Below are positions 32,430-58,043 of a DNA stretch of 64,000 nucleotides, piece by piece. The position numbers and the translations under genes are program-made. The stretch spans positions 25,048,001-25,112,000 of the forward strand of contig OZ004611.1 in assembly GCA_963924565.1 (NCBI GenBank). The letters are read 5' to 3'. The DNA comes from Ascidiella aspersa. Its lineage: Eukaryota. Below the pieces are notes generated by a model. That model was not told where the DNA came from, searched no databases, and saw nothing but the letters and a program-made list of their open reading frames with translations. Every line of letters begins with the position of its first letter. Position 1 is the stretch's first letter.

Positions 32430-32989
32430 CTCTACAGCCTGTATTTTAACCATTTACGCAACTAAATTAAGGTGGATTTTTTGCAATCCACTCATATTAA
32501 TGTCATAATTGATCCAACCGCCCGCATTACATGGTTTAAAAATATTTCACCATTTGCTATTACACTTTTACAACTTACATTTTGCCGCCTTAACAGTTTT
32601 GAAATTTGATACTGCGCATGCGCACGTCGGACTCGGGACCCGGGTAGTTTTACGTGGTCTTACCCGAGTCCCGAGTCCCGAGTCCGACTCCGGCAAAACA
32701 AACCGACTCCGTCGAGTCCCGAATCCCGAGTCCGACTCCGACTCCGCAGCCCTGCATAAAACGACTTTAAAAGCACGTCTAATTTGTTTTTTTACCTCTT
32801 ATTTTTTTTAGAAAAACTTTGCGTTTATTTGGTTATTTAATATTAGGTTTTTGCTAAAATTAATAACCCCTTCGTTAGACATGCGCTCTAATTCTATTAC
32901 AGCTTTTGTCTTTTTTGCTATTAATCGCTGTTCTATAGCGCTCGTAATGGACATTCATTATATTATCCACTTTCCGCTACATGTCGCTG

Positions 32990-36772: not shown

Positions 36773-36781
36773 ATGGTTTTG
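36773..36781 (+). CDS. GULP1: GULP1 start exon (MVL); exon 36693-36781
   Basis: Acceptor tttatttcag at 36692, aaatATGG context, donor TTG|gtgagc; phase 0 matches the next exon. Confidence 0.7.
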
Positions 36782-39700
36782 GTGAGCATTTATAATATTG
36801 TATTTTATAATATATATATTATATCTTTTTGATTTATATTTTATTTGCCTGTGCTTTTATTTTTGCTGTTTAACGTTTGTTAATTAAAACATATTATATT
36901 TTATTGTACTTAAGTTGTGTATAGAGGTTGTAAAAAGTGCCCCGTAAGGGCCGTTTGGCACTTTACGTAACTCTAAAAGCAAGTTATGTTTTATACAATG
37001 TCATTTGCAGAGCTGGAACAAAGGCAAATGGCTTCATTCGCACGAAACTTTGCTGAATTCGAAAGTCACCTACGTAGTAAAGGTATACGAATTTAGCAGC
37101 AGTGACATTGACGTGGTCGGTGCTTTTAAGAGATTCTGTAAATGTACAGTAATCTAAAATGTATTTCAGTCACAGCTTTTAATTACACAATATCGATTCG
37201 GAGAACGCGGATTGTTTTGCATTTAGGAAATATTTTTTGTTCGAAACCTTTACCGCGCGATAACTTTTTGGAAGATAATAATCGCGGGTCTGTTCAAGAT
37301 TCAAAATAAAAATGGTCAACAGTTAATTTAAATTTAAATCATTGTTTGTATGTCGAAGTTTGTATCGATGGCTGCTTTTCGAATTGAATCAACCGCAGCT
37401 CAGTTAACCAGGCCCTATCTAGGGAAGGCTTAGAAAAGCTAGTACACCAATTCAACAATAAACCTGGGCAAAGTGTATCAACATTAACAAGAAAAAAATA
37501 AACACATAATATATAAATAAATTGATCAAAAAATGAAGTTAATCAGTTCAAAAAGCTTTTCATTAGGTCCAACTAAATATTTTTTAGTTAAGCAGGACTC
37601 AACCGCCCTAAATATCCATGCTAACCACTAAAAATCTTGTGTAGAAATTTCTTAGAGGGCAAGTCAATGACTTGAATTAATTGCACTTAAGTTACTGTTT
37701 TCAAATGACTTGACTTAAGTCTTTTGGGTAAAATAACTGACTTTTTTGGACTTGGGTTTGACTCTAATCGAAAAAGACTCGACTTGAAACAGAGTTTTTT
37801 CAAATGACTTGACTGGAACATCATTTTAAAATGACTTATTTACAACACTGGAGCACAGCACTGCATGTGTCTATTTTGGTTTATATTGTTATACTTAACA
37901 ATTCTGCCGTGTATTTAGCTTGTTGGGGTGGTCGAGGTTAGCGATTCGCGCGGCATGGAAGTGGTTAAGGAGGCGCTGCAAAAACTCAAGTTTTCCCGCC
38001 ATATTAAGCGTTCAGAGGGAACGAAGCCACCAAAGGTGGAGATAAGCATCAATATCCAGGGAATGAAGATTTGCAACCTAAGGACGAAGGTTAGTCTGAA
38101 GATTTTTCAGCACATTTGATAAAGAAAAAGGTCCAAAGATTCTTTTATCTCATTAAGGTTTAATTTAATTAGTAGTCCTGTAAATCTATATTTGACTATT
38201 TACCCTTATTCGGAATCAGGATTACTGACGTTAGTGATTACTTTCCTCCATGATGTGTCTATCAATAATCAAATTAGAACACATATATAGCTATTCGGTA
38301 TTTTATATAACTTATTATCATTTTATTATTGAGATCGATCACCGATCTTTTTTTTCACTGAACAGTTGATTCAACAATGTAACGCAAAAAGGTTATCTAT
38401 CTTAAAAGAATGTTAATGGTTAGTTCAGTACATTTGATAAATAATTTATAGCACGCGCCAATGGTTGCCCGAATCAAACGGCTACATTTTGTTTTTTGAT
38501 CATTGAACCTTTTATAAATGGCTTTGTGAAATAAGTTAAAAAAAAAATATAAATTGGCTGTTATAAACTGCATTTTCTCAACAAGGTTTTGTTTACATAT
38601 GTAAACAAATGGGCTAAAATCACGTTACCAACGTCAGCTGCCTCAGTTATGCGTTGTGAATCAATTTCGTTCCATTTTAAAAGAGACGATTCAACTTAAA
38701 CAGTTTCAAGTTCGCCAAACCATTCAATAGCAAAGTTCCTGGTCCTCAAACGTGCTTAGGCTTCAGGCTGTCAAACATACGAAGGGAAGGAAGTTGTCTG
38801 ACTGCGGATATCAATGCAGCCCTGAAGGACCATTCCTTACACGAGCACGCCATTGAGCAAATTCGACCGTTCGTTGGATCAAATTTCGGCGAACCATTTA
38901 TGCATAATTCAGTCAGGATTGAATTCGTGGAATGAAAACCACATCGAGCGACTGTGGTTTTGTTTGCCTTGCGAGACAGATTCCTCGAGTGCTTTGAAAC
39001 ATATAGTATATAAGAGAAAATGCAAATCATTCTAAATAAGAATAACAAAGCCCATACGGAAGTAGGCATCATTTTTTTACTCTTTATATAAACGTTCAAA
39101 ATGATACCTTTACCTACTTCCGTATGGGCTTTGATATTATTGTTACATCTTACTGCAACCTCCAACCATTATGATCCAAAATTATAAATAGTGTATCAGT
39201 TTTATCAATTCACAACAAAAACAAACGGTCGGTTAGTTTTGCAGCTTGGTTTCGTTTGCCTAACAGGTCTTTGAATTGAACTGGGATAAAGATTTATTGC
39301 ACAATATTAACGCTAGCACAATTTGAAATATTTTGTAATTGTTTTACCGGTCCCGGTGTTTTTGCTAATAATTTGATTTTCAAGCTACTCAAAACACTAC
39401 TTTTAAAATAGACAAAGAGTTTCGGCCACCTTTGATAAATGAGTATTAGTTCCATTCACCCAGCAATGAAAAGGTTTGAAGTTTCAGCCTTGACGATCCA
39501 AGAAACTGATGGTAAAATGATGTAAACGCTTTATTGGCGTTTTAAAAGAAGCACCAGTTTGATTTAGTAGGCTACCCTTCCGTGTTCAACCGCTGTGCAT
39601 ATATCGCCGTATCCACATACCGCCCAATTACCACGTTGTTATGCCCACGGGACTAGATAGGACGTCTTGGTTATTCCAACGGTTATGTTAACTAGCAGAC

Positions 39701-42700: not shown

Positions 42701-45700
42701 TGTATTTTAATACAGGAAGTGTTACATGACATCAAACTACATCACGTCTCGTTTTGCGCCGAAGATAAGGAGGACAAGCGCATGTTTACCTTCATTGCAA
42801 AAGGATCAGATGGAAAGCATTTCTGCTACGGACTGGATTCTTTGCACGAAGTGGGTATATTGTTGGAAAATATTTTACGCTGTGTTTTTAAGCAGTTTGT
42901 TTTTTAATATAATGGTCTTAGTTGATGCCTTGTATTTCTTTAGATGTTTCGCCTTAAGCATACAAAAAGCGCTATAAGATCTAATTTAAGATTCTATTTA
43001 GATAAGATACTGAAGATGCTTTTAGTAGCGAAATATATCTATCATATAACATCCAACAAACTGATTTTCGTTTTACTACGTTCTGTACTGTGTTCAATCT
43101 TTATCATTGATGTGCAACAAGAATTGTTTGTTTTTACCATTCAGATTTAAGCAGACTCTGTTATTTAAAAGAAAATTTTGTTTAAATTATTAATATTTTT
43201 TAGGAACTCACGCAAATGTAGTGTTTTAAATAGACATAAAATCGCAAAATGCCTCTTCCCAAAACTGTTATCATTTGGGTATGATATTTTAAAGAACAAG
43301 TGTTCGCAGAACATAAAGGTATTATTGGGTTGTTTGATTTATCAGTCGACTTGTGGGCACTGGGCACGCATTGTAGTGGGCGTAGTTCTATCAGCAGTAG
43401 ACAGATAGTTACTTAAAGTCAGTTTATAGACAGGTGTAAATATCGTTGAATTTTAAAACTTTACATTTAAACAATTTATTGCCAGAAATACAGATAATGC
43501 AGCTACATTACTTAATCTTAGGCTAGCTAGAGGTTTGCTTTGTACTAACATTGTTATAATACTGTAGTAGGCCTTATAGTTGCAACGCATTTTCACTGCT
43601 ATTGCATTCATGCATTTATGGTGTGACTCATATTGATTGGAGCTTGTTCTAAACGTAAAATAAACCAATTTAAAAAAAATATCACTGCAATTTTGATTTT
43701 AAGATTTTAAAAACTTCTTGCATAACGGTTACTCTTTTGTAAAGACTGTTATGCAAAAATTATTGTTTGACCTAAAAACAAACGTATTTAGTATATTGGA
43801 TTGACGGTTAACAATATAACAAAATTGTTGCATGATAGACTTATATTTGTGTTGTGGAGTTTGGCCCGTTATTTTACAAATTTCAAGAAAAACCCGCCGA
43901 ATTTCTTGAAAATGTCACTTCATAATACATAGGGCTACATACCTTATATTTCTCTATTAAAGTAACGTTTGTGAGGGCAAAAAATGGTGACAAAGTGACT
44001 GACATAATACCTTATTGTAACAAGTTAGAGCCGTATACTCAGTCGCATAGGAATTTGCGCCATTTCTGTACGATGATAAAATCATACGCGAGCGCTAATA
44101 AGTAATGACGCACTTTGGTAATTACACCTAACGAGAAGAGAAGGGCGATATGTACGTATACTGTATGCCACTGGTAGGCACTACCTTGCATCAAAAAACG
44201 TCAAAGTAATTATCGGGTAATTCGCAAATAAAGCTTCTAAAAGTATATGTTCATAAATAGAGATTCTCGATTATTTATATTTTGTTACGATACCGATATC
44301 CGATATATCGACCAAAATTAAAGAGCGACAAAAGTGATACCGAATGACGTTTGACCTATAGCCCGATAACTGATATGAAAAAAATTGTAACTTGCAAGGT
44401 GCAAGCGTATGTTTTGGTCTCTAGGTTCTTAGTGCCTAACTTGCTAATACGCTAGAAAACGTGATTATCTTTAATTGCAAAGAAAGTATTTTATACAAAC
44501 ATACAGTTGCAAATTGTTATAGGCCACGTTATTGACTTTCATCCGATATTATCGAATATCCCTAGTTTCAAGTAATATATGTGTTTGTTGGCCCAATACC
44601 GGTATACAAATTCAGAACTGCGGACCAATTGTGTATCGATATTTTTATTCAACTAACCTGATTTTACCTATAAAAGAAAAACCTACCAAACATTTAGTGC
44701 AGCATGTATATATTATAGCCGCACGTAAGTGGGCTAGGGTCGTTCGTGCTTTCCAAATACGGTTCCCTTGAGGCACCGAATTTAACGTCCCTTTTTGTCC
44801 CTACATTATAACACGGGTATAGACACTGTGGCATTTAAAGCGCAGTAAAGGTTTAGGGCCACTGCCAAAACAAGTTTACTGCATAGGCGAGTTTATGTAT
44901 GGGCTTGAATTGAACCAACACTTGACAACTATAGGTATGGAGTTGTACAAGATTGTCTTTCGAAATGCATAACGTAAAGATGTCAGCTATAGTTTTTCAA
45001 GTTATAATCTATAAAATACGTATAAAAACTTTTTGTCAGTGTTTCCAGGCCTATAGTTATCTATGAAATAAACTTACTTTGATATGATGCTCCTGAAAAT
45101 AAATTAACGGTGGTAAAAGACGTATGTAAACGTATTTTACGGTGTTTCCAGCCCTAGTTGTCTAAGACATAAACGTTCTTTGATATGATGCTATTGAAAA
45201 TATACTGACAGTGATTCTCTCTCAAAACGTCATTATTAATTCATATCGCCGAATGCATATTTTACTGTACGTGTACGACCATGATCAAAATGTGCGACAT
45301 GAAAGGGTGGAATTCGCACGGGAAGAAGGCCGGCTTTATTATGCCTGTGCTCATTAATGTGCATATGTCAGCAGACGACATGTTGGCATCTTGGAGAGCG
45401 ACTTTGTATTGTACGATGGCCTGACGGGGTCGATGCTGTAGTTTAGACACATAAGAGAGTATGAAGTTTTCCATTTATTGAATGTGAAAGGAAATGTGTA
45501 CAGGCATAGTCAGCAGAAAATTTAAGTGTAATGGGTTAGCAGGATTAGTTTGAGTCCAACATAGATAAAGAACTTTCTCCATTTAATGTTAAAAAGCAAA
45601 ACTTCATGGTTTGTAGCATAATGGCTGGAGGTTGTAGTTAGACGTATATTGAGTAGCAAAGCCCATACAGAAGTGGGTAGGAGCTTTCGAACGTTTCAAA

Positions 45701-48700
45701 TAATCGTTTGTTTAAAATCAATAATAACTTGTAAAATAAAAATATATAAAAACGTCAGCTAAGATATTGAATTTCGTTACAGGTTGAAACATTATAGCAT
45801 TTAGGCTCACTGTTAATCGTGGAAAACGACAATGAGTTTACAATTTCCTCATGTTGTTGTGTACACGTTAAAAACACATTTATTATGTAGAAAGGCTTAA
45901 TTGCAAATTCTATAAAGCTACATATTGTGAAGACTTTTTGTTTTTTAAAAACGTTTTAGCTTTACTTGAGTCAGTGGTTTTAAAGTTTTAACGGATCGGC
46001 ATAACATATTAAAATTAATTGTTTGAACATATTAGCCGTAGCACAGTGTTGTAAGGATAACAAATCATTTGACAGCCTGTGTGCAGCGCAAATAGCGTTA
46101 TAAGTGATTTAAATCGTAGAATAATGATTACTGTGGTTGTAAAGTTTTTCTTGTTTCAAAATTAATACGGTCCTAGAGTATTTCAAGGTGGCAAATAGAG
46201 TAAGCCAGGTGAAATGTTTCAGTACAATTGACCTAACTCGATGAGTAGGAAACCTATTTTAAACGAGAGTTTTTGAACTTCTTGACCTCTCCGTAGGGTT
46301 AAACCGCCTTTGAGGTCTGGCGCGAATATAGTGTTGACAGATTTGTTTACGTTCGAAAGGCCAACGACATCACTCTGACGATCGGACAAGCCTTTGAACT
46401 TGCCTACGACAGATACTTGAAGACCGACAAAGGAATGGCCACTTCAAAACAGGTATGGCTCGTCGGGGTTAATTGGGGTTAACTTCGGTTCGTCCATCCG
46501 TCGCATTTATTCCGAGAATGAGACATTGAAAAGGATCTAGTTAAAGTTTATAACGGCATTTGATTCAATTTTATTCTTTACTGCGACCTAAATATTAAAA
46601 TCAATTCTCGTACTAAACAAAACGTTTTTTTGAGATGCATTTTTTGCTCTTTTTCATATGTTACGTTTTACGTTATAGAAAATTTCCTTACTTACATTTA
46701 TACAATAAAAGTGAGACTTTGGTTTTAATAATAAAAAGAGTAATGAAAGCTCTTAAAAGTGTTTCGGTCGCAAGGTTTTTTAATTCTTACTAAGGAAACG
46801 TTCGCAAATTTAGGGCTACAACAAACCGCAAACTTGGATGGCACGTAAAAAGATTTAATATTAATGACATTTTCTGTTTAACCTGATAGATTTACTTCTC
46901 ACTCCAAAATGCAACTGTTGCGCCTCTCCACGCAATAATGACTCACCATCATTATAACGATGACGTAAAAATGAAAAGTCACTTCAGGCGATATAATGCA
47001 ATTTACGCCAATGCGGATGATTAATAGTAATTAGTGCAGCTGCAAATTAGTATTTCAAACCAAACTATGATTCAACATCAAAGCGATTTGTTTTTTGATA
47101 AGCACTTGCAACATTTCATTTTTTAAAGGAGTTGTTCAATCAAAATATTTAAAAACACCTTTTTTAAATACACACTAAGCCAAGCGCTAGACCGTAAAAA
47201 TGTAAATGCAAGGATTTACAATGTGTAAAACATGACTTCATATGGAGGCTTGGCTTTCTAATGGATACAACAATTGATTACAAACAGTTACAATTTAAGA
47301 AGGGTGTTTTGTGTGTAAAGAATTTCTTTGGATAAGTCAATTCTCTCGGCACTATCAAATAGGCGGATAGTTTTCAACGTTGTGATAAACAATTGCGAAT
47401 AGTTTTCAAATGAAATACAGCCCAGTTAACGTCGGATGTTGTATAAATGTTCCATCTTCACTTTGTGTAGTTTTACTATTTAGCAAACATAAGTGTTTTG
47501 ATTTTAATATAACTTTAATTCTAATGAAATCGAAACCTTTTGGTGTTAACGACCAAAAACAGTTTTGTAATAAACAAGATTTTACGCTTGTTGCGGAAAG
47601 TTCCTCGAGTAACTAAATAGACGCGCAATTTCGAAAGGAAATTCTGTCGGCGTTTGCATCGCCTGGCCTCGCCATATGCTTTTTAATTGGCTGTCGCAGG
47701 CCTTCAGCTTGCAGTAGAGAAACAGACAGCTGCCCTAGGACAGCCAAGTTAGCGATTAAACAAGTATCGACTGCTGCGGTGTGCCTGGTGGTCCCAAGCT
47801 CAGTTGACCTTGTTTATAAGGGTTGGGACTTCCGCCAATAATCCTCACATGACCTGTACGGTTTTTTGGCCTGCGCCACAAAAAAGACTAGAAACCCCCG
47901 ACATGTTGGAAATAAAACCAAAACGAAAGCTAAAGTAAACGTAACTTTAATTTATACAAACCATTTTGCCTTTCAATATATTGTTCATTAATCTGGTTTC
48001 CTTTTTTCTTAAATGGCAGTTTTTCAACATTCAAGGATCAGTCCCCTATCCAATTGGTGGTCCCACCCGTTGCTATAGACATACCGAAATCATAATATAA
48101 CTAATAAATTGAATCGTTTTAACCCTTCAGAGTGATTTTCTAACCCCTTGCTGTTCGCTTTCAAACGGACCAGGACTAATATGTTGCAGCAAATAGACAA
48201 AGATTCGCAAAAAACAAAAACAGGTAAAAAAGGACCAGAATGCGTGATCTGGTCAGTAACCGCAAGTCTTTTAATATGTAAAGCCAATTAAGAAAGCAAT
48301 CGTGCAGCTGAATGTTTCAAACACCCCATTTATTTTGTAGTAATATTTCAAACGCAGTTATTAGGAAAATATATTTTAACCAAATGTTAGAAATATCTCA
48401 GGCTGGTCAAGGCAGGATAGGGTAATGCGTACTGCGTACTGCAGCTATTTAGTTGGGTTAGGAAGCACGTTAGCGTTTTGCTTAGGGTAGGTCAAGTATT
48501 TTTATATTTATTCTACTAGGTCAATAGATGACTAAGAAATACGTCATATTATTTGGTTGCGATAGCTACATAAAGCATTACGCCATACCCTATCCCGCCT
48601 TGGACTCAACATTTGATCAAAGTATTTTCCCAGTAATTACGGTAAAATTAAACGCTGGCAAAAGGCTAGCATGCTAAGTCGAAAAGTCGTCTTTTGGCTG

Positions 48701-51700
48701 CCAGCACGTACTGATTTATAACCGGCCAGTATGGACATACTAATGGCGTGTACCGGACACACTAGTGGATGTGGTAAGAATTGATCAATTATAAATAGCA
48801 GCGGATATTGAGTTGCGTGTACGCGCCGTGAGTATGTTTAAAGCCCGATAAGCTTGTGAATTTAAATTATAGCATCTTCTATTAACGCCAAATCAGTTTT
48901 ATATTTAAAACTTGGTCTAAATCATCGCGCCCACCTTTCTTTTCGTTGCAAGGCAGTAATTTTGTTTCATTGGCAATCCTAAAACACAACATCTTAATAT
49001 TAGTTATTTGCCTTTGCTGTCTGCGTGTTTGCAGAACAAAACCAAAGATAATTTTTTCGGCAACATTAAAAGACCTATATTGTGACTTCACTGATCTTAA
49101 AAGGTTAAGACCTTGCTGACTGATTGTTGTTCGAAGCGGTGCGCTACTCAAGTTAATACAAAAATAACATTATTATTATTACGTATTTTAAACAGCAGTC
49201 AATCACCAACCTGGCAAATATGACTCCTTAAACATGGTCTTATACAAACTTACACTCAAATCTTTTTTAGCATTTTTAAATAGTATTCATTTGATGAATA
49301 GTTTTGGCAAATTAATGTATTTCATGATGTGAAAGTTTACTGGATGGCGGATCCGTGTCAAATCTGTAAGACTAAACGTTTAATTTTCTTAAATAAGCTC
49401 AAAATCTCTCACTGCAGCAGAGAGATTAAGATCCGCAGGTTGCCGACCTGTCATATTGTTTTTGGTTTATACTTTATAGCTTTAAAAGGTTTAACAAAAC
49501 CTGCACTAAACACGTTTAAAACAGGTTTTTACTTCTCATGAAGGTTTCACGTTTCAATTCAGACCATGTTTGTACCAATATCATAGTAAACATGTGTGGG
49601 GATTGTGGCACTTTTGACGCACAAGTTGGTAAATTTACCTTTCAAGGTCACATGTTGCATTAAACATTAACAATATGTAATCATGACGCCTCTGATTGAC
49701 AACTCTATTCAGGAATTTTTGACAAACGTCCGTTCGAACACTGTGAGGCATTTACTCAGTATTTTGCAGATTTTGAGTGGGTGGCGTATCGTTAAACCAC
49801 AAATCCCACCGTCTGTGGGATTGCTTTAGTAATTAAATTATCAGGCATTTCTGAGTTGAATAAGTAATTACGATGCACTGTGCACAAATCTGTGCGATAT
49901 ATGACGCATTTAAAAACGCGGTAATATCAGTTCAAGCAACTATGATACATTTACTGGGTGAAGTACTGAAATCTACTCTGATCTAATAGTTACCTATACC
50001 ACCATTTTATTTAAGTTAGTTTAGCTGTTCGCATTTACATTGTTCTGTTTTTAAGATTGTCTTTATATAGTAAAATGCCAAGTAATCTCTGTAGGACCAA
50101 AACCCTATGTTCATACACCTATCAGTTAAAGCTAGCTGGTATTTTTGCAACGACGCAATTAAATTAACCAGTCACTTTATGGCGCTGTACATGCACTCCT
50201 GTTTAGAGCTTTAGTTAAGCTGTGTCCATTGCTGTTAATGCGACAAGCAGCGAGTAAAAAAAACCTGCTACTACGAACGTAAAAATCTTAACTATTAAAG
50301 CAGTTGCAATACAAAGTTTTATTACCTTTACTTTTTAAAACATTTCAAGATATTTGTAATTAAAACAATTTTAAACTTACTGATGATTTTATAAGGATTC
50401 TGTGATGCATATAATTAGTTTTTTTTTAATTTTAAATGAATGGCGATTCATTAAGCCAACAAGTACCAAAAACCTATGACGATGTATGGGTTTGCTTTGA
50501 TATTTATCAGGCATTTCTGAGTTGAATTAGTCATTACAATGTACTCGGCGCAAATGCGTGGGATGTGACAAATTTTGCAAAGCGGTAATATCAGTTCAAG
50601 CAATTACGATAAGGTTACTTTTTGTAATCTGGACGAACTCCGATCTAGTATAGTTACCTATATACCACCATTAATGTTAGTTTACATGGTCGTATTAACA
50701 TCCTTCCATTTTATCATTCATATAAGGTTTTATGTCATTAACCTGTAACACTTCAAGGAAACCGACTTAAAACACACTTTTGTTCAAATACGCATTTGTT
50801 TAAGATAACTATATCCATTTGTTTGCAAATAAACAATCAAATATACTTGTCAACTTGATTGCAATTTAAGCGTAGTTTAACGCTTGTCATTGCGTAATCA
50901 GGGCGTGTAAATAAAAAGGGAATTTTGTGTTTCTAGGTTATGGAGCTGAACAAGCGAATCGAGCAACTGGAAAAGGAGAATACCACTCTTAAGCAGACCA
51001 TTTCTGGTCTCACCCAAAAAGCGAACCGCAAACCTACCGCCATTGTGAGTTTCAACATCGCAATTCGGCCGCCCACAAAACTTGATTCTTTGCATTGGGG
51101 TGTTAAATGCAACGCTTTTTATTTTAACGTTCAATTAAAAAACGATCAATGTTAAACTTTAGACGCTATGTTAGAAATTGTCTGTTTTTTAAAAAAAACT
51201 TAAAATCAGCATTTGTTTCCCAGCTTATTGCATTTCTATTTAGGCGTTCTCTATCTTTCTATTCTTCTTTGTGTGTTAAAATTTAACTGTGTTTTCAAGC
51301 TTTCTACTTCTCGTTATAATCCTTCTCTTATTTTCCCTGAACAAGGATGCTGTTTCTCTGAAAACCCCACAAGCCGAACATGACAAGCCTTCTTCAAGTG
51401 GTTTGAAAACCTCCCAATCAGTTGATTATCAACGTCTTGATTCCAAAAGTCTTGCAACATGTGAACAAATCAGCAAAAGTGAAGAACAGTTGACCTCGAG
51501 TAACCTCTTAACCACGCTGTTCCAAGACAACGCCCTTTCCCACTCACCAAACAACAAGCGCTATTTACAAGCGAAGATCGGTTCTTCTTCCACAGAAGGT
51601 TCTGGAAGAAGGAGACTGCAAAAACAGGCCTACATCGATCAAACCATTGCCTCAGTAGAACGTGCCAAGGCTTCGTTGAAAAATCTAAAGGACTACGTGC

Positions 51701-54700
51701 ACCAGCGTAAGTTGCGAAAAAAACAGAGGTCCAATAGTGACACTAGCGTTGGTCCGAAAGTGAAGCAAATTAGACAGGCAACGTCGGTGGACGACGAGGA
51801 CATTAACTACGCCAAGATCTCCGACATCCGCGACGTGGTTAAGGATTACAAGGCCAATCTCAAGAGCGACACTTCCAGCCTTAAAAAGCCTGAAGCGAAA
51901 CCGCCAACTCCGACTAAATCGCGACAGGCAGTTAAACGCCAATCAGCGGTTACTTCCTTGCCTGCGATCCCGGTTGAAAAGAAGAACTCAAACCAGAAGT
52001 TGGTTCGACGCAACAGCGCAAACAGTCTGTACACTGGCTTCGACGAGGTTATCAGCACGCTGAAAACAATGATGGTGTCAGACGAGAATACGAAATCTAA
52101 AACGCTTCCAAAAGATCAAAAGATTGAGAATATAACTGATAACAAAAAGCAGCCAAATAGTGACCCCGTAATTCCACTGAATCTGCCTGAAACGATAATA
52201 GACGATTCGGCCTGTATAACCAGCAAGCAGAACTACATTAACGTTCCGTATGCCTCTATACAATCCAAATACAAGCATCTGTGGAAGAAAGGTGAAGACG
52301 GGAATTCTTCTCCTCCAGCATTGCCTCCACGAGATCACCCCTTAATACCTCCAAAGCCTAAACACCTTCTTCAGTTGGACGACGCCAGCTTTAAGTCATC
52401 TTCAATGGGTTCCCTTAATTTTTCGGTTACAAGCAGCGAACTTAGCGCTTCCACCGATAGACACGGCGACCATTCTTACTCATTTGATTCTCCAGACGAA
52501 TCTATTTACATGAACAAAATACCTGTTCCTCCACCAGCAATAACAGAAGCAATAAACAAAATCCAAGAGGATCCCATACGAATTAATCCACTCTACAAAT
52601 TCAATGAAACCTCTGATAGGCAAAATGTGGCCAGAAAACGCTACAGCAATCCTGGAAAGCTGAATGTCGCTACCATGCCAGACAAAAAACGATCGAGCAA
52701 CGTTGCGATGGAATCTGTAGGCCAGACTGGCAAATCATATCCGAGCAAAATGGTTTTGGATTCAACATTGGAGCGCTATTCTGGACAAGACGGTTATCTT
52801 TTGCTAAAAGAGGCCAGCAAAGTTGCTCAGTCCTACCTTCAGAGCGACGACGGTACAACGAATGTCGATTCGACTTACGACAACGTTTACAACTTGATGA
52901 AATCGGTTCGCAAAGACGCCAGAGAGGCCAGTCGAGTTAAAGAGCAGAGCTACAAAGCACAGTACACATCGAATACGGCGGAAAGCCTGGCGTCAGCGGA
53001 TGTGCTAGACGCGCGAGACCTCATAGAAATTTTGCAGCAAGCGGAAAGGTTGGATTCGAAACATTCAAAGGCCCCTGGCAAGCAGCAGCGTGACTCCGGA
53101 AGCAATTCGATGCAAGGTTCTTCTAAACAACTTGCCCCGGCCTTGCTCAAACCACTACCATCGGTACTTTACTCTATACTTTCATTTTCCTTTTATTCTT
53201 TTTTTCTCTTAGTAAACAATTTTACTATTTCAACATGTCTTTTTCTTTCACGTCAACAGGTTGTGATGGATTACTTAATACAGCTAAACACCATTTAGTT
53301 ATAGCAACCTTTTTGTTTCTACAGTTTTAAATAACAACAATTTGGTCGGCGTATTGCACTCGTAAACACTTTCATATCCATTTTATTTTTTAAACTTGTT
53401 TAGAATGGCAACTTCAAATCATAACGCCAGTATGGATATATGTTTAACTTTGTGCAAATTTATAACCAATTGCTAACGTAAAGTCGAAGATGAAACGTTT
53501 CTTTTTTTAAGTTTGTAGGTGATTTCTATGAATCTCAAGCATAGGCTTTATAACAGGCATTTAAACGCCTGTTTTTTAACCTTCGTCTCCGTCAAGGTCA
53601 ACGCCCAGCCCACTTTGTCGCGGGACGCCTTCGACATGCGCCCCTTCAACGGAACCCAATCCTCCGGGGAATCCCCGGTCGTTCGACTGCCCTCACCCGA
53701 CGAGGTTCACCCCAAAACCCCGCACCGTCGAAGGTCGATGGCAAAGAAGCAAGAAGGTAAATTTTACTTACTGTTCTAGTGTTGCGGTGGAAACAGTCAT
53801 AGACGGAAAGTCGCATTTCTAAGTTGGTTTTAGTCATTAAGGTAAATGCAAAATAGGAAAATAAATTAAAGCGAAATGAACCCAACTAAACCTCGCCAAA
53901 TATTATTGTTAGTTTTTGTTTAGTATGTGTTTCCACAACATGATCTTGCCCTTCAATAGAATACATAATGCCGAAGAAAAATGTTGTAAAATTTTATAAA
54001 TTTTTATTTAAATAATCGCAAAATAGCTCGAAGATTTTTAATTTGAATGTGTTAAGACTGGTGTAGCGTATTTTGACACAGCAAAAACTTCATAAAACTG
54101 ACTTATATAGTAAAATAATTGACATATCCACCTCTAAAAAGGGTCATAGTCGCCGATCTTGACAAAATATGGCTACAAACTCAAACGACAAAACGTGTTT
54201 CGCTAAAATGTGTGGCGTACATACTCCTCAAAAACATGTGTTCATGTTGATACGGGGACTTCCACGATAGTCAGCTAAGTAGTTAAATAAATCATATCGT
54301 TCGTAGGGAGTAAATTTAGAGGGAGCGCCCAATAAATCTGAACCACATGTTGAAAGATGTTTAATTAAATTCACCTTGCAAAAATTATTTTCCACCTCAG
54401 CACTACTTTAAGCAAAAAAACATACTTTAAGCAAAAAACATATAATATATTATTGATTCCGAATGTTGGGTCACCGTTTTATTTTTTTCTCTAAATTATG
54501 AAAATATAAAAATATTTTGTAAACTGGTATCTGGCCCTAAGTATGTCTATAACCTGTAACCTTACTTGGGCTTTTTTCTTCTAGTTTACAGATTTTGGAC
54601 TTTTTTTGCTATTATATATGCTTTTACTCAAAAGATACAGTCTAAACAAGTATTTTAATAACAACCTCTGGGTCCAAACATTTTTGATTCGCATTGAATA

Positions 54701-56973
54701 TTGTGTCGCTCACGCCCATTTTGACCGACCTCTCATAATGCATTTTTGTTTAGATCTTGCGAGGCAACTTTTCGATGATCCGCTTGGAGAGCTGACAAAA
54801 CTGGACGAACAACTTCAGCACAACGAGGTAAGCCTTGGACCAGTCTTGTAAAAAAGTCATTAACAAATAACTTAAATTCCAGTAAGATCATTTATTAGTT
54901 GTCCACGTTTACTCAGGTATTATCGTAACGAGCTCGGCCGAATTACGCCATTGATATACAAATATATTGTTACTATAAAAATGAATAAGTGATCCTGAGC
55001 AAATATTTTGAATAACAAACGACCCGTAACATATAGAAAGCAAACTATAACTTTACCAAAAAAGATTTCAGTGAAAACAATTAGGTCGAATTCAAGGCGT
55101 TTGCCTTAATGCTTTTGGTTAACCTCGGTCATTTATTAAATTAACTGAAATTATGTCAAGTCATTATGTGTAAAATTCTAAAGTCAAATCAAGCCATTTG
55201 AAAACAGTGACTTAATTCAAGTAATTTGCTAAAAACTGGTATATTTCACATTTTCAGCATACGGTACAGAATTTTTGTCGTGTAGTTTAAGGAGTTGCAA
55301 CATTTAACTGTCGTAACAAAATATAAATAAAGAGCACATGTAAGCTATCGCAATATCTGCCCGCGATACGCGGTTCAAAGTCGTTTATTTAGTGAAACTT
55401 ATTGTCGGCGAAGCTCACAATTCAGAGTTGATCATATGTCAGCATTTAAAACTGCGCATACAGTGACTCAAAGTCTATATATGTTTCTTTAGATACGTAA
55501 TTTCCGTGTGGGCCACCGGGCGTTATGCGCACCAAACGGTTAAATTACCGGGTGTTTATCAGTAATCTCTGTTAATAATACGGAAATACTGTTCAAAGGA
55601 TATATGTCACTGCGACTGTAATTGAATATTTTTTAGATTAATAACTCTTGCCATGATTTGTAACCTGTTTTGTCGAAATTCTGAATTAGTTATTGACAAA
55701 CGGAATGCATTAAAATATATAGGCAGTCAGTTTTGCTTTGTTGATTGCAATCAGCACGTGCTTGATGTTCTTAAAGGATATCTACACTTGACAAAACTTG
55801 AACAGATCGGTCTTCTTAATATAAAGAGCTTAATGAAGAAATCTTTGTAAGTCATTAACCATGTCATCAACCAATTTTGTATTTTCTTGAACAAGCAAAC
55901 CTCGAATTATTTGAAAAAAATGTCGCATTACTGCCACCCAGCGAGCGCGTTCAAAATATGCCCTACCATTTTTACACTGACCTTCAGACAACAATATGGT
56001 TTATTACGTTCAAAATAAAAAAAATATTTTATTAATCAGTATGTTGGAACAATCTCTAAAGGTTATAACGCTTTGCGTTACGAAACGAAAGGTTTCTATA
56101 TAACTATAGTATAGTTTTATCTTTGGTTGCTTTACAACCAATTCACCATTCTTATTTCTCTGTTTCTTATACCTTTATTAAACACTATCTATACGAACTT
56201 TTGCAGGATTATTTTCTGATCTATTTTTTATCCTTTTTTTTCATCTTTCCTTATTTTCCGCCCCTTTTAGACTGTTTCTGATTACGAAAATCACAGTGAA
56301 ATCTTTCGGAAAATAATGCGCTCCTCAAAACTGTCCGCTCTTCTTCAACAACACGTGGCAGACGAAGGTCATGTTCAAGGTCAGACGGCGGAACAAGTTC
56401 AGTCCTTCTTTAATCCCCTAATCGACGTCGAAGGCAATACATCCAACGAGAGAAACACAGATTCTCAGGAAATTAAACATCGAAGGAGTTTAAAGACGCG
56501 GGAAGTACGACAATATATTCTTGACCACCATCTTCTCCTTTTTATTTCTTCTACTTTTCGTTTATACTTTTTCTTCTTTGTGAAAGATTTTTCTACAAAG
56601 AGTGTGTTTTCCTGGTGGTACACAATATAATGTATTTTGGTACACAATATTCGTATTTTAAACGTTCTCTTTTTGTTAAGCCCCGAACTTGCTGCTTTTA
56701 ACCAAACTTTGGTAAAAGATACAAGCACATTTTGTTCATATACTTTTATGAACTAATGAAATCAGCATGGTAAACGTTTATATCAGTGGTTCTCAACCTT
56801 TGGTGGCTCGCGGTACCCTACAGAAATTACAAATGTGCAAATATATTTTCTACTTCTACAAAGTGTGAACGTTACATTAAATTCTTTAGGGTGGACATTT
56901 GCAATCCAGTATGATGGTAGACGACACCGATGGGTCGTTGGACGCCTTCGACCCTCTCAAGAGCCTAATCTAA
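36773..56973 (+). CDS. GULP1: GULP1 / ced-6 PTB-domain engulfment adaptor. Spliced CDS join(36773..36781,37011..37082,37919..38089,42716..42850,46360..46452,50937..51044,[51346..53163],53597..53756,54754..54827,[56271..56504],56890..56973); ~301 aa without and ~985 aa with the bracketed exons
   Basis: All introns are GT-AG with consistent phases. Translated exons closely resemble GULP1/CED-6: [78 protein letters not shown], coiled coil LNKRIEQLEKENTTLK, DAFDMRPF and C-terminal LDAFDPL. Confidence 0.93.
37011..37082 (+). CDS. GULP1: GULP1 exon [24 protein letters not shown] (start of PTB)
   Basis: tttgcag acceptor, AAG|gtatac donor, 24 codons; similar to the GULP1 W(M)H(T)PEAL...Y.AK segment. 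Confidence 0.9.
37656..37850. repeat. (TGACTT/AAGTCA)n-rich DNA-transposon remnant (family D)
   Basis: Multiple tgactt/gacttg units ending acaacactg; the same units and terminus occur at 59812-60308, with similar units at ~55155-55225. Confidence 0.65.
37919..38089 (+). CDS. GULP1: GULP1 PTB exon LVGVVEV...CNLRTK
   Basis: tatttag acceptor, AAG|gttagt donor, 57 codons, strong GULP1 similarity. Confidence 0.95.
39037..39178 (+). mobile_element. Family P copy 3 (inverted arm, direct arm, tail)
   Basis: aataacaaagcccatacggaagtagg ... cctacttccgtatgggctttgatatt plus tail ending attatgatcca. Confidence 0.75.
40676..40801 (+). mobile_element. Family P copy 4 (inverted arm, direct arm, tail) with a 13-bp TSD
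   Basis: Perfect flanking direct repeat gtttgtcaaagtg at 40658-40670 and 40804-40816. Confidence 0.78.
41435..41714. mobile_element. hAT MITE (280 bp)
   Basis: TIR cagggatgggcaa / ttgcccacccctg; TSD ctataaaa / ctgtacaa (6/8); cgggcc subterminal motifs; related fragment at ~63198-63270. Confidence 0.8.
42716..42850 (+). CDS. GULP1: GULP1 PTB exon [18 protein letters not shown]...LDSLHE
   Basis: tacag acceptor, GAA|gtgggt donor, 45 codons. Confidence 0.95.
45039..45215. repeat. Diverged tandem duplication, ~102-bp period
   Basis: gtgtttccag...tagtt.tcta...ataaac....ctttgatatgatgct...gaaaata twice. Confidence 0.8.
45615..45700 (-). mobile_element. Family P copy 5 (reverse orientation)
   Basis: Reverse complement of tail plus arm; flanking direct repeat tcatggtttgt / taatcgtttgt (9/11). 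Confidence 0.7.
46360..46452 (+). CDS. GULP1: GULP1 exon [31 protein letters not shown] (PTB C-terminal helix)
   Basis: AAG acceptor (the upstream CAG at 46340 is out of frame), CAG|gtatgg donor, hallmark ITLTIGQAF motif. Confidence 0.95.
48408..48602. mobile_element. MITE-like element with 28-bp imperfect TIRs
   Basis: caaggcaggatagggtaatgcgtactgc vs reverse complement of gcattacgccataccctatcccgccttg (24/28); internal ggttagg-like units. Confidence 0.65.
49838..50713. repeat. Spaced direct duplication of ~210 bp (49838-50053 and 50504-50713)
   Basis: Shared blocks ttatcaggcatttctgagttgaat, gcggtaatatcagttcaagcaa, atagttacctata and accaccatt in the same order. Confidence 0.88.
50937..51044 (+). 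CDS. GULP1: GULP1 leucine-zipper/coiled-coil exon VMELNKRIEQLEKENTTLKQTISGL...TAI
   Basis: tttctag acceptor, ATT|gtgagt donor, 36 codons, heptad leucines as in GULP1. Confidence 0.93.
51346..53163 (+). CDS. GULP1: Giant 1818-nt (606-codon) phase 0-0 exon encoding a disordered Ser/Lys/Pro-rich segment; probable alternative exon of GULP1
   Basis: Core of the 669-aa ORF. Pyrimidine tract plus AAG at 51345; donor TCG|gtactt at 53164. The hydrophobic ends of the ORF correspond to translated intronic pyrimidine tracts. Confidence 0.8.
53597..53756 (+). CDS. GULP1: GULP1 exon VNAQPTLSRDAFDMRPF...AKKQE
   Basis: AAG acceptor, G|gtaaat donor (phase 1); DAFDMRPF resembles the GULP1 FDMxPF motif. Confidence 0.88.
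54754..54827 (+). CDS. GULP1: GULP1 exon DLARQLFDDPLGELTKLDEQLQHNE
   Basis: tttgtttag acceptor, GAG|gtaagc donor, phase 1-0; KLDE as in the GULP1 C-terminal region. Confidence 0.88.
56271..56504 (+). CDS. GULP1: Second probable alternative exon (234 nt, phase 0-0) TVSDYENHSE...RRSLKTRE
   Basis: Very long pyrimidine tract plus TAG at 56270; open 78 codons; weak donor GAA|gtacga. Confidence 0.68.
56890..56973 (+). CDS. GULP1: GULP1 last coding exon GGHLQSSMMVDDTDGSLDAFDPLKSLI*
   Basis: ttctttag acceptor, TAA at 56971-56973; terminal DPL motif as in GULP1/Ced-6. Confidence 0.87.
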   Translation, partial: GGHLQSSMMVDDTDGSLDAFDPLKSLI

Positions 56974-57333: not shown

Positions 57334-57573
57334 TGTTTATCGTCAATTTGCTGTTTTTCTTGTGAAAAATGCAATATAAAATGTGCTGAATTAAGATTGG
57401 CCCATGCACATCCTGATGCTTCAAATCGACAAAAATCTAATTTCCTGTCTTTACAAAAATCAAGGCCATAAGCTGCAACTTGCACCCAATTACTTGATCT
57501 AATGCAACACGCTCAGTCGCTTACATGTTATTACACCTCCGTTGTTTTTTGAAAGTGATAGGTTAGTTTTGAC

Positions 57574-58043
57574 CAGGGATGCGGAGTCGGTTAAAAATAA
57601 CCCGAGTCCAACTCCCGAGTCCGACTCCGGCCAAAAAAATAAACCCGAGTCCGACTCCCGAGTCCCGAGACCGACTCCGGTCAAATGTGCGATTTTGCCG
57701 AGTCTCGAGTCCGGCCGAATTCTACAGCCCGTGTTTCGCCAATTTACGTAACTAAAATAACGTGGCTATTCAACAATCCACTTATAGTGGTGTCAAATAA
57801 TTCATTCCACTCACATTACATGGTTGGAAAATGTTCCACCATATAATATTCCACCTTTACAATTTAAATTTGGCGGCCATATGAGTTTTGAAATTTGGTA
57901 CCGCGCATGCGCATGTCGGACTCGGGACTCGGGTAGTTTTACAAGGTCTTACTCGAGTCCCGAGTCCCGAGTCCGACTCCAGCAAAAACAAACCGACTCC
58001 TCGAGTCCCGAGTCCCGAGTCCGACTCCGACTCCGCAGCCCTG
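57574..58043 (+). mobile_element. hAT-type MITE family A copy 2 (intact, 470 bp)
   Basis: TIR cagggatgcggagtcgg / ccgactccgcagccctg; perfect 8-bp TSD gttttgac (57566-57573, 58044-58051). Confidence 0.95.

What the first reader, a model, noticed from the sequence alone, without database searches (positions are those of the whole stretch)
51346..53163. A 606-codon frame-preserving exon turns compact GULP1 into a large scaffold carrying CED-1-tail-like NPLY and YASI motifs
Seen: skipping this exon and the 56271 exon gives a 301-aa protein, essentially canonical GULP1 length, with conserved motifs on both sides. The insert is phase 0-0 and low-complexity. It contains NPLY (52585-52596), VPYASI (YASI 52249-52260), ITIM-like VDYQRL and INYAKI, YxN Grb2-SH2-type sites (YINV, YMNK, YDNV), SH3-type PPALPPR and PLIPPKPK, and basophilic kinase sites (RRNS, KRQS, RKRYS, KKRSS). 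Known: the CED-6/GULP PTB binds NPxY motifs, and the C. elegans CED-1 tail signals through NPLY and YASL. Inference: the long isoform carries a ligand for its own PTB domain (autoinhibition or oligomerisation) plus a phosphotyrosine docking platform, making splicing a switch between a simple adaptor and a Gab/IRS-like scaffold.
Basis: partly seen in the sequence, partly recalled or inferred. Interest (0 to 1): 0.8.

Follow-up and report, generated by a model that had tools for sequence, protein, structure and literature searches.

The report
Sea-squirt GULP long-isoform cassette exon
This is a real 606-codon coding exon in a sea-squirt GULP/CED-6 engulfment-adaptor gene; an optional exon at the same position is already annotated but unstudied in Ciona and Clavelina, and the NPLY and YASI motifs that made it look special are not conserved, while a YxN site, a PPxPPKP motif and a helical tyrosine-bearing module are.

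Summary
Window 51346-53163 is an uninterrupted 606-codon, phase 0-0, AG/GT-flanked exon. It lies between the coiled-coil exon (50937-51044) and the DAFDMRPF exon (53597-53756) of a GULP/CED-6 orthologue (36773-56973, + strand). All listed motifs are at the stated places.

It is not new as an annotated object. Ciona intestinalis carries an 848-aa form with the homologous insert and a 308-aa isoform X2 that lacks exactly this insert and a second cassette. Clavelina lepadiformis has a 757-aa and a 293-aa form. A profile search of 1.84 billion proteins found only eight relatives, and no family or paper describes the insert.

NPLY lies in a segment present only here and in the nearest relative, which has no NPxY. 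The YASI tyrosine is conserved in 0 of 9 relatives. The conserved features are:
- an amphipathic helix followed by a basic cluster;
- LPETxIGD;
- one YxN;
- PPxPPKP;
- a helical module with invariant GYxxL and YDxV.

The protein is mostly disordered, so a docking-scaffold role is plausible but untested.

In this species the exon is transcribed. However, the only RNA contig reads through the upstream intron, and no inclusion or skipping junction was seen.

The parts
36773..36781 (+). Probable first coding exon, ATG GTT TTG (M V L), followed by GTGAGC
   Evidence: Pattern search and reading. It matches the MVL start of the Ciona and Clavelina proteins. Inferred; no RNA evidence.
37011..37082 (+). 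Exon, 24 codons (SWNKGKWLHSHETLLNSKVTYVVK), phase 0-0
   Evidence: tblastn with the Clavelina protein P0002, 58% identity. Splice sites read.
37919..38089 (+). PTB/PID domain exon, 57 codons
   Evidence: Pfam PID positions 6-65. Best solved relative is the GULP1 PTB 6itu, E 5e-14, against Dab2 at 8e-4. 67% identical to P0002.
42716..42850 (+). PTB/PID domain exon, 45 codons
   Evidence: Pfam PID positions 71-115, 26 bits, above the cut-off. The only solved hit is the GULP1 PTB 6itu, E 1e-11. 71% identical to P0002.
46360..46452 (+). Last PTB exon, 31 codons (ANDITLTIGQAFELAY...)
   Evidence: Pfam PID positions 118-139. Its 3' end is joined to 50937 in an RNA contig of run X3 (loose end at 50935).
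50937..51044 (+). Coiled-coil / leucine-zipper exon, 36 codons (VMELNKRIEQLEKENTTLKQ...)
   Evidence: Aligned to P0002 residues 159-183. RNA contig depth 40.7 in X3. Donor ATT|GTGAGT.
51346..53163 (+). The finding: a 606-codon phase 0-0 cassette exon, orthologous to the optional insert of Ciona and Clavelina GULP
   Evidence: ORF and splice sites. Homologues found, aligned. Ciona and Clavelina isoform pairs. Single copy in its own genome. Transcribed in X3, contig 51017-52852 at depth 7.5.
51604..51738 (+). Conserved long helix (residues 87-131, QAYIDQTIASVERAKASLKNLKDYVHQRKLRKKQ) ending in a basic cluster
   Evidence: Most conserved block in the alignment. AlphaFold2 helix with pLDDT 89-97.
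52006..52077 (+). RRNSANSLY...EVISTLKTMM block (residues 221-244): basophilic Ser site followed by a helix
   Evidence: RRxSxxSLY is kept in 3-4 relatives. Helix 224-244 has pLDDT about 78.
52183..52206 (+). LPETIIDD, a conserved short motif (LPETxIGD) of unknown partner
   Evidence: Present in 7 of 9 relatives.
52234..52245 (+). YINV, the one conserved YxN site (Y297, N299), in a disordered stretch
   Evidence: The tyrosine is kept in 8 of 9 relatives and Asn is nearly invariant. pLDDT below 50.
52312..52362 (+). PPALPPRDHPLIPPKPK, a conserved proline motif (core PPxPPKP = Px[LVI]PxK)
   Evidence: The core is kept in 8 of 10 sequences.
52585..52596 (+).
   Evidence: The segment is absent in 8 of 9 relatives. 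The nearest relative has no NPxY. Chance expectation 0.08 per protein.
52765..52911 (+). Most strongly conserved module, TLERYSGQDGYLLLK ... VDSTYDNVYNLMKSVR (residues 474-522), with invariant T474, G480, G483, Y484, L487, D508, Y511, V514, M518 and R522
   Evidence: Invariant columns in the 10-sequence alignment. Predicted helices 468-500 and 509-547, pLDDT 86-92.
53597..53756 (+). Exon with the GULP-type DAFDMRPF motif, 160 nt
   Evidence: The 3' end is fixed by the RNA joint 53756>54754 in 4 raw reads of X4 and one X3 contig. The acceptor at 53597 is inferred from frame and orthologues. RNA also covers 53235-53596 upstream.
54754..54827 (+). Exon, 74 nt (LARQLFDDPLGELTKLDEQLQHNE)
   Evidence: RNA joints on both sides. 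Sequence read.
56271..56504 (+). Second cassette exon, 78 codons, phase 0-0, either included or skipped
   Evidence: X3 contigs join 54827 either to 56271 or directly to the last exon, and join 56504 to the last exon (joints and loose ends; sequence). A cassette at the same position is missing from Ciona isoform X2.
56890..56973 (+). Last coding exon (…GSLDAFDPLKSLI, stop TAA)
   Evidence: Loose-end sequence of X3 contigs matched. The C-terminal LDAFDPLK is shared with Ciona and Clavelina.

Best explanation
The stretch is the large optional coding exon of the sea-squirt orthologue of GULP/CED-6, the PTB-domain adaptor of the CED-1/MEGF10/LRP1 engulfment pathway. The short form has 301 codons: PTB domain, leucine zipper and a DxFDMxPF/LDAFDPL tail. 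Including this exon inserts 606 residues between the zipper and the tail, and with the second cassette the protein reaches 985 codons.

The insert appears to be specific to tunicates and evolves fast (about 21-36% identity between species). About 60% of it is predicted to be disordered. It keeps a fixed series of elements:
- a long amphipathic helix ending in a basic cluster;
- an RRxS..SLY-helix block;
- LPETxIGD;
- one YxN;
- PPxPPKP;
- a Ser-rich acidic stretch;
- a two-helix module with invariant GYxxL and YDxV.

The most likely role (inferred, not shown) is an isoform-specific interaction platform. It would let receptor-bound, zipper-dimerised GULP recruit SH3/SH2-type or other partners through the conserved disordered motifs and the helical module. 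The NPLY and YASI motifs are lineage-specific and are not part of the conserved design.
For: Gene identity. Three window exons cover Pfam PID positions 6-65, 71-115 and 118-139. Their best solved relative is the human GULP1 PTB domain 6itu, E 5e-14 and 1e-11, far ahead of Dab2. All exons are collinear with the Clavelina protein P0002, whose PTB also matches 6itu at 2.6e-44 against 1e-15 for Dab2 and Numb.

Exon. It has 606 open codons with AG/GT flanks in phase 0-0.

Orthology and optional use. P0003 (848 aa) and P0137 (873 aa, 'uncharacterized protein LOC100182079 [Ciona intestinalis]') carry PTB + zipper + insert + tail. P0017, 'isoform X2 [Ciona intestinalis]' (308 aa), is 99-100% identical to P0003 but lacks exactly the insert and a second cassette. 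Clavelina has P0002 (757 aa) with the insert and P0019, isoform X4 (293 aa), without it.

Restricted distribution. A profile search of 1.84 billion representatives gave 8 hits. There was no Pfam family, no solved relative and no second copy in the own genome.

Conserved elements and the non-conservation of NPLY/YASI.

Order and disorder. AlphaFold2 gives 380 of 606 residues pLDDT below 50. Helices 87-131, 224-244, 468-500 and 509-547 have pLDDT 78-97.

Transcription. A contig from the RNA run X3 covers 51017-52852 at depth 7.5, against 40.7 and 24.4 for contigs on the flanking exons. This is compatible with minority inclusion.
Against: In this species no read or contig shows the junctions 51044>51346, 53163>53597 or 51044>53597. 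The one RNA contig on the exon runs unspliced through the upstream intron 51045-51345, and another runs through 53235-53596. Inclusion and skipping here are therefore inferred from orthologues, not seen.

The docking function rests on motif resemblance only. The two invariant tyrosines sit in confidently predicted helices and may be structural.

Eleven polymorphisms listed inside the exon are 8 non-synonymous to 3 synonymous. That shows no overall purifying signal, although none hits a conserved block and none breaks the frame.
Confidence: 0.72

Rival explanations
1. One reading: the long isoform carries in NPLY (and YASI) a CED-1-tail-like ligand for its own PTB domain. This would give autoinhibition or head-to-tail oligomerisation, switched by splicing.
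For: NPLY and YASI are really present at 52585-52596 and 52249-52260, in regions predicted to be disordered and so accessible. CED-6's PTB binds the NPXY of CED-1 without needing phosphotyrosine, and the CED-1 YXXL is a separate SH2 site (PMC9388098).
Against: NPLY lies in a segment missing from 8 of 9 relatives, and the nearest relative has RIDGSPVHPAI there. None of the seven clear orthologues has NPx[YF] anywhere in the insert. The YASI tyrosine is kept in 0 of 9. The chance expectation of one NPxY is 0.08 (P = 0.077), found among about ten motif classes inspected. A ligand central to the isoform's function should be at least as conserved as YxN or PPxPPKP.
Confidence: 0.05
2. The conserved tyrosines and helices form a small folded protein-protein interaction domain, possibly extending the zipper-mediated dimer. 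On this view they are not phosphotyrosine docking sites, and the insert is a structural or oligomerisation module with disordered linkers.
For: Y484 and Y511 lie in helices 480-500 and 509-547 predicted with pLDDT 86-92. The invariant residues around them (G480, G483, L487, D508, V514, M518, R522) have a helical spacing typical of a packed interface. Helix 87-131 is the best-conserved block.
Against: pTM is only 0.23 and no tertiary packing is predicted with confidence. No fold or family relative was found. YxN and PPxPPKP lie in disordered sequence and are conserved as short linear motifs.
Confidence: 0.3
3. In this species the exon is constitutive or nearly so, and there is no splicing switch.
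For: No skip junction 51044>53597 was seen.
Against: Short isoforms lacking exactly this insert are annotated in Ciona and Clavelina. RNA contig depth on the exon is about one fifth to one third of that on the flanking exons. The contig on the exon starts at 51017. For a 31-mer graph, that is where a path sharing GT after 51044, as the 53597 exon does, would branch off. This is my inference.
Confidence: 0.08
4. The interval 51045-53596 is simply a retained intron in this species, or the ORF is an independent nested gene, and it is not translated as part of GULP.
For: The X3 RNA contigs read through both flanking introns.
Against: Six hundred and six open codons at 38% GC cannot persist by chance. 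The reading frame is conserved as protein in at least eight other sequences, and in two species it is modelled in frame with the PTB exons. It has no in-frame ATG until about residue 242 and is bounded by AG/GT in phase 0-0 on the gene's strand. There are no frameshifts or stops in the other haplotypes, whereas the introns carry indels.
Confidence: 0.05

Closest known systems
Ciona intestinalis 'PTB domain-containing engulfment adapter protein 1' long form (P0003, 848 aa; P0137, 873 aa, 'uncharacterized protein LOC100182079') and isoform X2 (P0017, 308 aa)
   Same: Same gene and same architecture. A large insert lies between the leucine zipper and the DxFDM exon, and a second smaller cassette lies before the EGFSKGL/LDAFDPL end. 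The short isoform lacks both. The same conserved blocks occur in the same order.
   Different: Only 28% identical in the insert. The Ciona insert is about 455 residues against 606 here. Ciona lacks NPLY, YASI, INYAKI, YMNK and the PPxLPPR duplication.
Clavelina lepadiformis GULP models (P0002, 757 aa with the insert; P0019, isoform X4, 293 aa without it)
   Same: Collinear exon by exon with the window: 58-71% identity in the PTB exons and about 28-31% in the insert.
   Different: Shorter insert. It has no NPxY, a single PPLPPKP, and YDSV instead of YDNV.
Vertebrate GULP1 / C. elegans CED-6 / Drosophila Ced-6
   Same: PTB domain of the GULP type (6itu), a following leucine zipper and a C-terminal DxFDMxPF-type tail. 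The short 301-codon form matches the size of human GULP1.
   Different: No detectable homologue of the insert outside the eight hits. Fish and invertebrate GULPs of 400-526 aa exist, but the insert profile does not match them.
Docking scaffolds with an N-terminal PH/PTB domain and a long disordered tail (IRS, Gab, Dok, FRS2, Shc CH1 region)
   Same: Works-like resemblance only. A membrane or receptor-targeting domain is followed by a disordered region with a YxN (Grb2-SH2 type), a Px[LVI]PxK/PxxPxR proline motif (SH3 type; the Lys form is Crk-like) and YDxV (Nck-SH2 type). These motif specificities come from general knowledge, not from a test here.
   Different: No sequence homology. Only three conserved tyrosines, two of them in predicted helices. 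Phosphorylation is unknown.
CED-1 / Draper / MEGF10 cytoplasmic tail (NPxY + YxxL)
   Same: The window's exon happens to contain NPLY and YASI. The whole family has an invariant GYxxL. The CED-1 motifs and their partners are described in PMC9388098.
   Different: NPLY and YASI are not conserved. The invariant YxxL is a different site, and it lies in a predicted helix. There is no homology to receptor tails.

Membership tests
GULP / CED-6 PTB adaptor | N-terminal PTB/PID domain of the GULP type, closer to GULP1 than to Dab, Numb or ARH | tested here: met
   Tested exon by exon. Pfam PID positions 6-65, 71-115 and 118-139. Best PDB hit is the 6itu GULP1 PTB, E 5e-14 and 1e-11, against Dab2 at 8e-4 or no hit. 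The orthologue P0002 gives 2.6e-44 against 1e-15.
GULP / CED-6 PTB adaptor | Leucine-zipper / coiled-coil segment directly after the PTB domain | tested here: met
   Exon 50937-51044 (MELNKRIEQLEKENTTLKQTISGL) aligns to the zipper of P0002 and P0003. There is a faint bZIP_1 hit on that stretch of P0002. Dimerisation itself is not testable here.
GULP / CED-6 PTB adaptor | C-terminal tail with DxFDMxPF and LDAFDPL-type motifs | tested here: met
   RDAFDMRPF lies in exon 53597-53756 and GSLDAFDPLKSLI in the last exon. Both are shared with Ciona and Clavelina.
Alternatively spliced cassette exon | Both inclusion and skipping junctions present in RNA of this species | tested here: inconclusive
   The single read-laying run showed neither kind of junction. 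The raw RNA run gave only 12 reads on the 5.9-kb stretch. The RNA contig on the exon is unspliced at its 5' side. Inclusion and skipping are annotated in Ciona and Clavelina.
   Present only in the window. It is absent or gapped in all 9 relatives at that position, and there is no NPx[YF] anywhere in the seven clear orthologues. Chance P = 0.077.
   Tyr302 is kept in 0 of 9 relatives. A different YxxL (G-Y484-x-x-L487) is invariant but lies in a predicted helix.
PTB/PH-domain docking scaffolds (IRS/Gab/Dok/Shc type) | Several conserved SH2/SH3-type short motifs in a disordered tail | tested here: inconclusive
One YxN and PPxPPKP are conserved and lie in disordered sequence. YDxV and GYxxL are invariant but helical.
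PTB/PH-domain docking scaffolds (IRS/Gab/Dok/Shc type) | Tyrosine phosphorylation and phospho-dependent partner binding | not testable with these tools
   This needs phosphoproteomics or pull-downs.
PTB/PH-domain docking scaffolds (IRS/Gab/Dok/Shc type) | Sequence homology to a known scaffold family | tested here: not met
   No Pfam family, no PDB relative, and only tunicate-type hits in 1.84 billion proteins.

The most novel reading that the evidence does not exclude
A chordate lineage (the tunicates) evolved an optional 400-600-residue cassette that turns GULP from a simple receptor adaptor into a signalling hub. The conserved Px[LVI]PxK (Crk-SH3 type), YxN (Grb2-SH2 type) and YDxV (Nck-SH2 type) sites would physically couple the CED-1/CED-6 engulfment branch to the Crk-DOCK180-Rac branch and to the actin machinery. 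Splicing would decide in which cells this coupling exists, for example in phagocytes during colony take-over or metamorphosis.
Probability: 0.2. Interest if true: 0.55.

Novelty: new member of a known kind. Interest (0 to 1): 0.3.

Why it matters
GULP/CED-6 is the conserved adaptor of the CED-1/MEGF10/LRP1 corpse-clearance pathway, and what it recruits downstream is still poorly defined. Sea squirts, the sister group of vertebrates, keep a second, three-fold larger isoform with a fixed set of short motifs and a helical module. This gives a natural gain-of-parts variant in which partners of GULP could be fished out. It is also one more example of tunicate genes hiding long disordered optional exons that databases hold but nobody has studied.

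For the scan, the main value is corrective. The eye-catching NPLY/YASI pair is a lineage-specific coincidence. The conserved features are elsewhere: Y297-x-N, PPxPPKP, GYxxL...YDxV and the 87-131 helix.

Tried and rejected
- Pfam on the exon gave nothing: the best hit was Cwp8_D2 at E 0.19.
- PDB sequence and profile searches found nothing beyond the PTB domain.
- The ESM Atlas was closed for new sequences, so two attempts returned nothing.
I therefore could not fetch the Ciona or Clavelina loci to check exon boundaries, phases or dN/dS, or learn which organisms P0001 and P0004-P0009 come from. The listing of cluster members gave no names.
- A search of the own genome for a paralogue of the insert, to test an exon-shuffling origin, found only the window's copy.
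- A polymorphism test gave 8 non-synonymous to 3 synonymous among the 11 listed SNPs, too few to be informative.
- RNA junctions: the only read-laying run gave 12 raw RNA reads after sampling 6% of the run, none on the exon. The contig evidence is unspliced. Both read tools were then at their caps.
- Literature searches for GULP in Ciona or ascidians, and for GULP1 isoforms, found nothing on this insert.
- The nested-gene and retained-intron readings were considered and rejected (see the rival explanations).
Exons were searched apart and isoform lengths were obtained by adding exon lengths. For that reason no PTB-plus-NPLY complex was modelled.
- I did not run fold search on the AlphaFold model. 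It has pTM 0.23 and consists of isolated helices, so matches would be meaningless.

Full report
**What is in the sequence**

Window 51346-53163 (+) is an uninterrupted run of 606 codons. It is preceded by a pyrimidine-rich tract ending in AG and followed by GTACTT. The open frame extends a little into both flanks (51280-53295). It is by far the longest ORF in the 64-kb window, which has about 38% GC, so it is a coding exon and not a chance ORF. No ORF longer than 86 aa overlaps it on the opposite strand.

**The gene around it**

The + strand carries a GULP/CED-6 gene from 36773 to 56973. I read the exons apart and did not join them.

| Exon | Codons or length | Content |
|---|---|---|
| 36773-36781 | 3 codons | MVL, inferred |
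| 37011-37082 | 24 codons | N-terminal segment |
| 37919-38089 | 57 codons | PTB domain |
| 42716-42850 | 45 codons | PTB domain |
| 46360-46452 | 31 codons | PTB domain, last part |
| 50937-51044 | 36 codons | Leucine zipper |
| 51346-53163 | 606 codons | The finding |
| 53597-53756 | 160 nt | DAFDMRPF |
| 54754-54827 | 74 nt | LARQLFDD... |
| 56271-56504 | 78 codons | Second cassette |
| 56890-56973 | 27 codons + stop | ...LDAFDPLKSLI |

Splice sites and sequences were read.

- The three PTB exons cover Pfam PID positions 6-65, 71-115 and 118-139.
- Their best solved relative is the human GULP1 PTB domain 6itu, with E 5e-14 and 1e-11. Dab2 scores 8e-4 or does not match.
With both cassettes the total is 985.
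- The genome has 308 Mb in 75 contigs. It is a tunicate's, because the nearest named relatives of the gene are from Ciona and Clavelina. Two earlier notes of this scan on other windows also call it a sea squirt.

**Relatives of the exon**

- The word-based search found two proteins. One is an ORF-only call, P0001 (701 aa, 34-36% identity over 84%). The other is P0002 from Clavelina lepadiformis (757 aa), which has PTB, zipper and the homologous insert in one model.
- A profile of these three was run against 1.84 billion representatives and found only eight proteins.
- P0003 (848 aa) is a complete GULP with the insert.
- P0004-P0007 are single-ORF calls on megabase-sized contigs.
- P0008 and P0009 are more distant and of unknown origin.
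- A further search identified P0003 as Ciona intestinalis. P0017, 'PTB domain-containing engulfment adapter protein 1 isoform X2 [Ciona intestinalis]' (308 aa), is identical to P0003 except that it lacks exactly the insert and a second cassette.
- P0137 (873 aa, 92% identical to P0003) is listed as 'uncharacterized protein LOC100182079 [Ciona intestinalis]'.
- Clavelina also has a 293-aa isoform X4 (P0019) without the insert.
- The two-cassette layout in Ciona is the same as in the window.
- The insert occurs once in the window's own genome.
- It matches no Pfam family and no solved structure.
- I found no paper on it.

The exon is therefore the orthologue of an optional exon that already sits in public annotation of two other tunicates, unnamed and unstudied.

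**Test of the headline motifs**

In the 10-sequence alignment:

- NPLY (residues 414-417) lies in a segment that exists only in the window and in P0001. P0001 reads RIDGSPVHPAI there.
- None of the seven clear orthologues has NPx[YF] anywhere in the insert.
- Tyr302 of YASI is kept in 0 of 9 relatives and Tyr417 in 0 of 9, with 8 gaps.
- VDYQRL is not conserved.
- INYAKI and YMNK are shared only with P0001.
- RKRYS and KKRSS are not conserved.
- One NPxY in a 606-residue protein of this composition arises in 7.7% of shuffles, and it was one of about ten motif classes inspected.

The background it rests on is correct: the CED-6 PTB binds the CED-1 NPXY, and the CED-1 YXXL is an SH2 site (PMC9388098).

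**What is conserved instead**

Mean identity to the window is 21-36%, but a fixed series of elements recurs:

1. Residues 87-131, QAYIDQTIASVERAKASLKNLKDYVHQRKLRKKQ. This is the best-conserved block.
2. RRNSANSLY...EVISTLKTMM.
3. LPETxIGD, in 7 of 9 relatives.
4. Y297-x-N299, with Tyr kept in 8 of 9.
5. PPxPPKP, which fits Px[LVI]PxK. The window and P0001 add an upstream PPxLPPR.
6. A Ser-rich stretch, SSSDLSSxDxMSGxSF.
7. TLxRFSGEDGYMxLK...(Y)IDSTYDxVxxLMExIR, with ten invariant residues including Y484, L487, Y511 and V514.

AlphaFold2 with this alignment gave a mean pLDDT of 51 and pTM of 0.23.

- 380 of 606 residues have pLDDT below 50.
- Confident helices lie at 87-131 (pLDDT 89-97), 224-244, 468-500 and 509-547 (pLDDT 86-92).
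- YxN, PPxPPKP and also NPLY lie in disordered sequence.
- The two invariant tyrosines lie in helices.

**Likely mechanism (inferred)**

The PTB domain and zipper are unchanged, so the long isoform should still bind receptor NPxY tails and dimerise. The insert would add an isoform-specific interaction platform.

From general knowledge, and not tested here, pYxN is the Grb2-SH2 preference, PxLPxK the Crk N-SH3 preference and pYDxV the Nck-SH2 preference.

An equally serious alternative is that residues 468-547, and perhaps 87-131, form a small folded interaction or oligomerisation module in which the tyrosines are structural.

- Run X3 behaves as RNA. It has spliced contigs (53756>54754 and 54827>56271) and no coverage of the long introns.
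- It confirms the downstream exons. It also shows that the 56271-56504 cassette is either included or skipped.
- Exon 46360-46452 is joined to 50937.
- The big exon is covered by one contig, 51017-52852, at depth 7.5. Contigs on the neighbouring exons have depths of 40.7 and 24.4.
- That contig runs unspliced through the upstream intron 51045-51345. The downstream contig starts at 53235, right after an allelic 5-bp indel, and so also covers the 'intron' up to 53596.
- No junction 51044>51346, 53163>53597 or 51044>53597 was listed.
- The raw RNA run X4 was sampled at about 6% and gave only 12 reads. All come from + strand RNA if the library is of the usual stranded kind. None lies on the big exon.

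The exon is therefore transcribed at a lower level than its neighbours. Its splicing into or out of the mRNA in this species remains unproven and is inferred from the orthologues.

The other haplotypes carry SNPs but no indel or stop in the exon, whereas the flanking introns carry indels. The 11 listed SNPs are 8 non-synonymous to 3 synonymous, and none falls in a conserved block.

**Limits**

- The look-up of encoding contigs and the protein Atlas were closed. I could not look at the orthologous loci, their transcript support or their source organisms.

**Verdict**

The optional big exon in GULP is real. The NPLY/YASI self-ligand is not supported. The docking platform is plausible, but on other residues.
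- Novelty: this is the orthologue of an already annotated but uncharacterised tunicate-specific isoform.
- Interest is modest, 0.3.

Noticed in passing
window 56271-56504: A second cassette exon (78 codons, phase 0-0, TVSDYENHSEIFRK...SLKTRE). RNA contigs of run X3 show it both included (54827>56271, 56504>56890) and skipped (54827>56890). A cassette at the same position is absent from Ciona isoform X2.
   Followed up: partly
window 53235-53596 and 56507-56700: RNA covers sequence that the gene model treats as intron. An X3 contig and two X4 reads lie just upstream of the 53597 acceptor, and two X4 reads lie just after the 56504 donor. All are from the + strand. This could be intron retention, nascent RNA or an internal start; it was not resolved.
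   Followed up: no
window about 55134-55330: A short high-copy repeat in the intron. DNA k-mer depth is about 2900-3300, against 65-120 for the surroundings, and contigs of all runs break there.
   Followed up: no
window 32509-32811 and 57888-58223 (also 31056-31388 and 57503-57748): A repeated intronic element gives near-identical ORF translations (…AHAHVGLGTRVVL.GLTRVPSPESDS…SDSDSAAL…).
   Followed up: no
proteins P0001, P0010-P0015: The nearest relative of the exon occurs on contigs filed as JGI/IMG and ENA metagenomes and on Logan contigs. DNA of some other tunicate is therefore present in 'metagenome' collections, called there as a stand-alone 691-701-aa ORF.
   Followed up: no
proteins P0023-P0086: Many teleost GULP1 isoforms have 360-460 aa, against about 300 in mammals. 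Bivalve, insect and copepod GULPs reach 420-526 aa. Extra coding sequence after the zipper is therefore common, but the tunicate insert profile does not match it.
   Followed up: no
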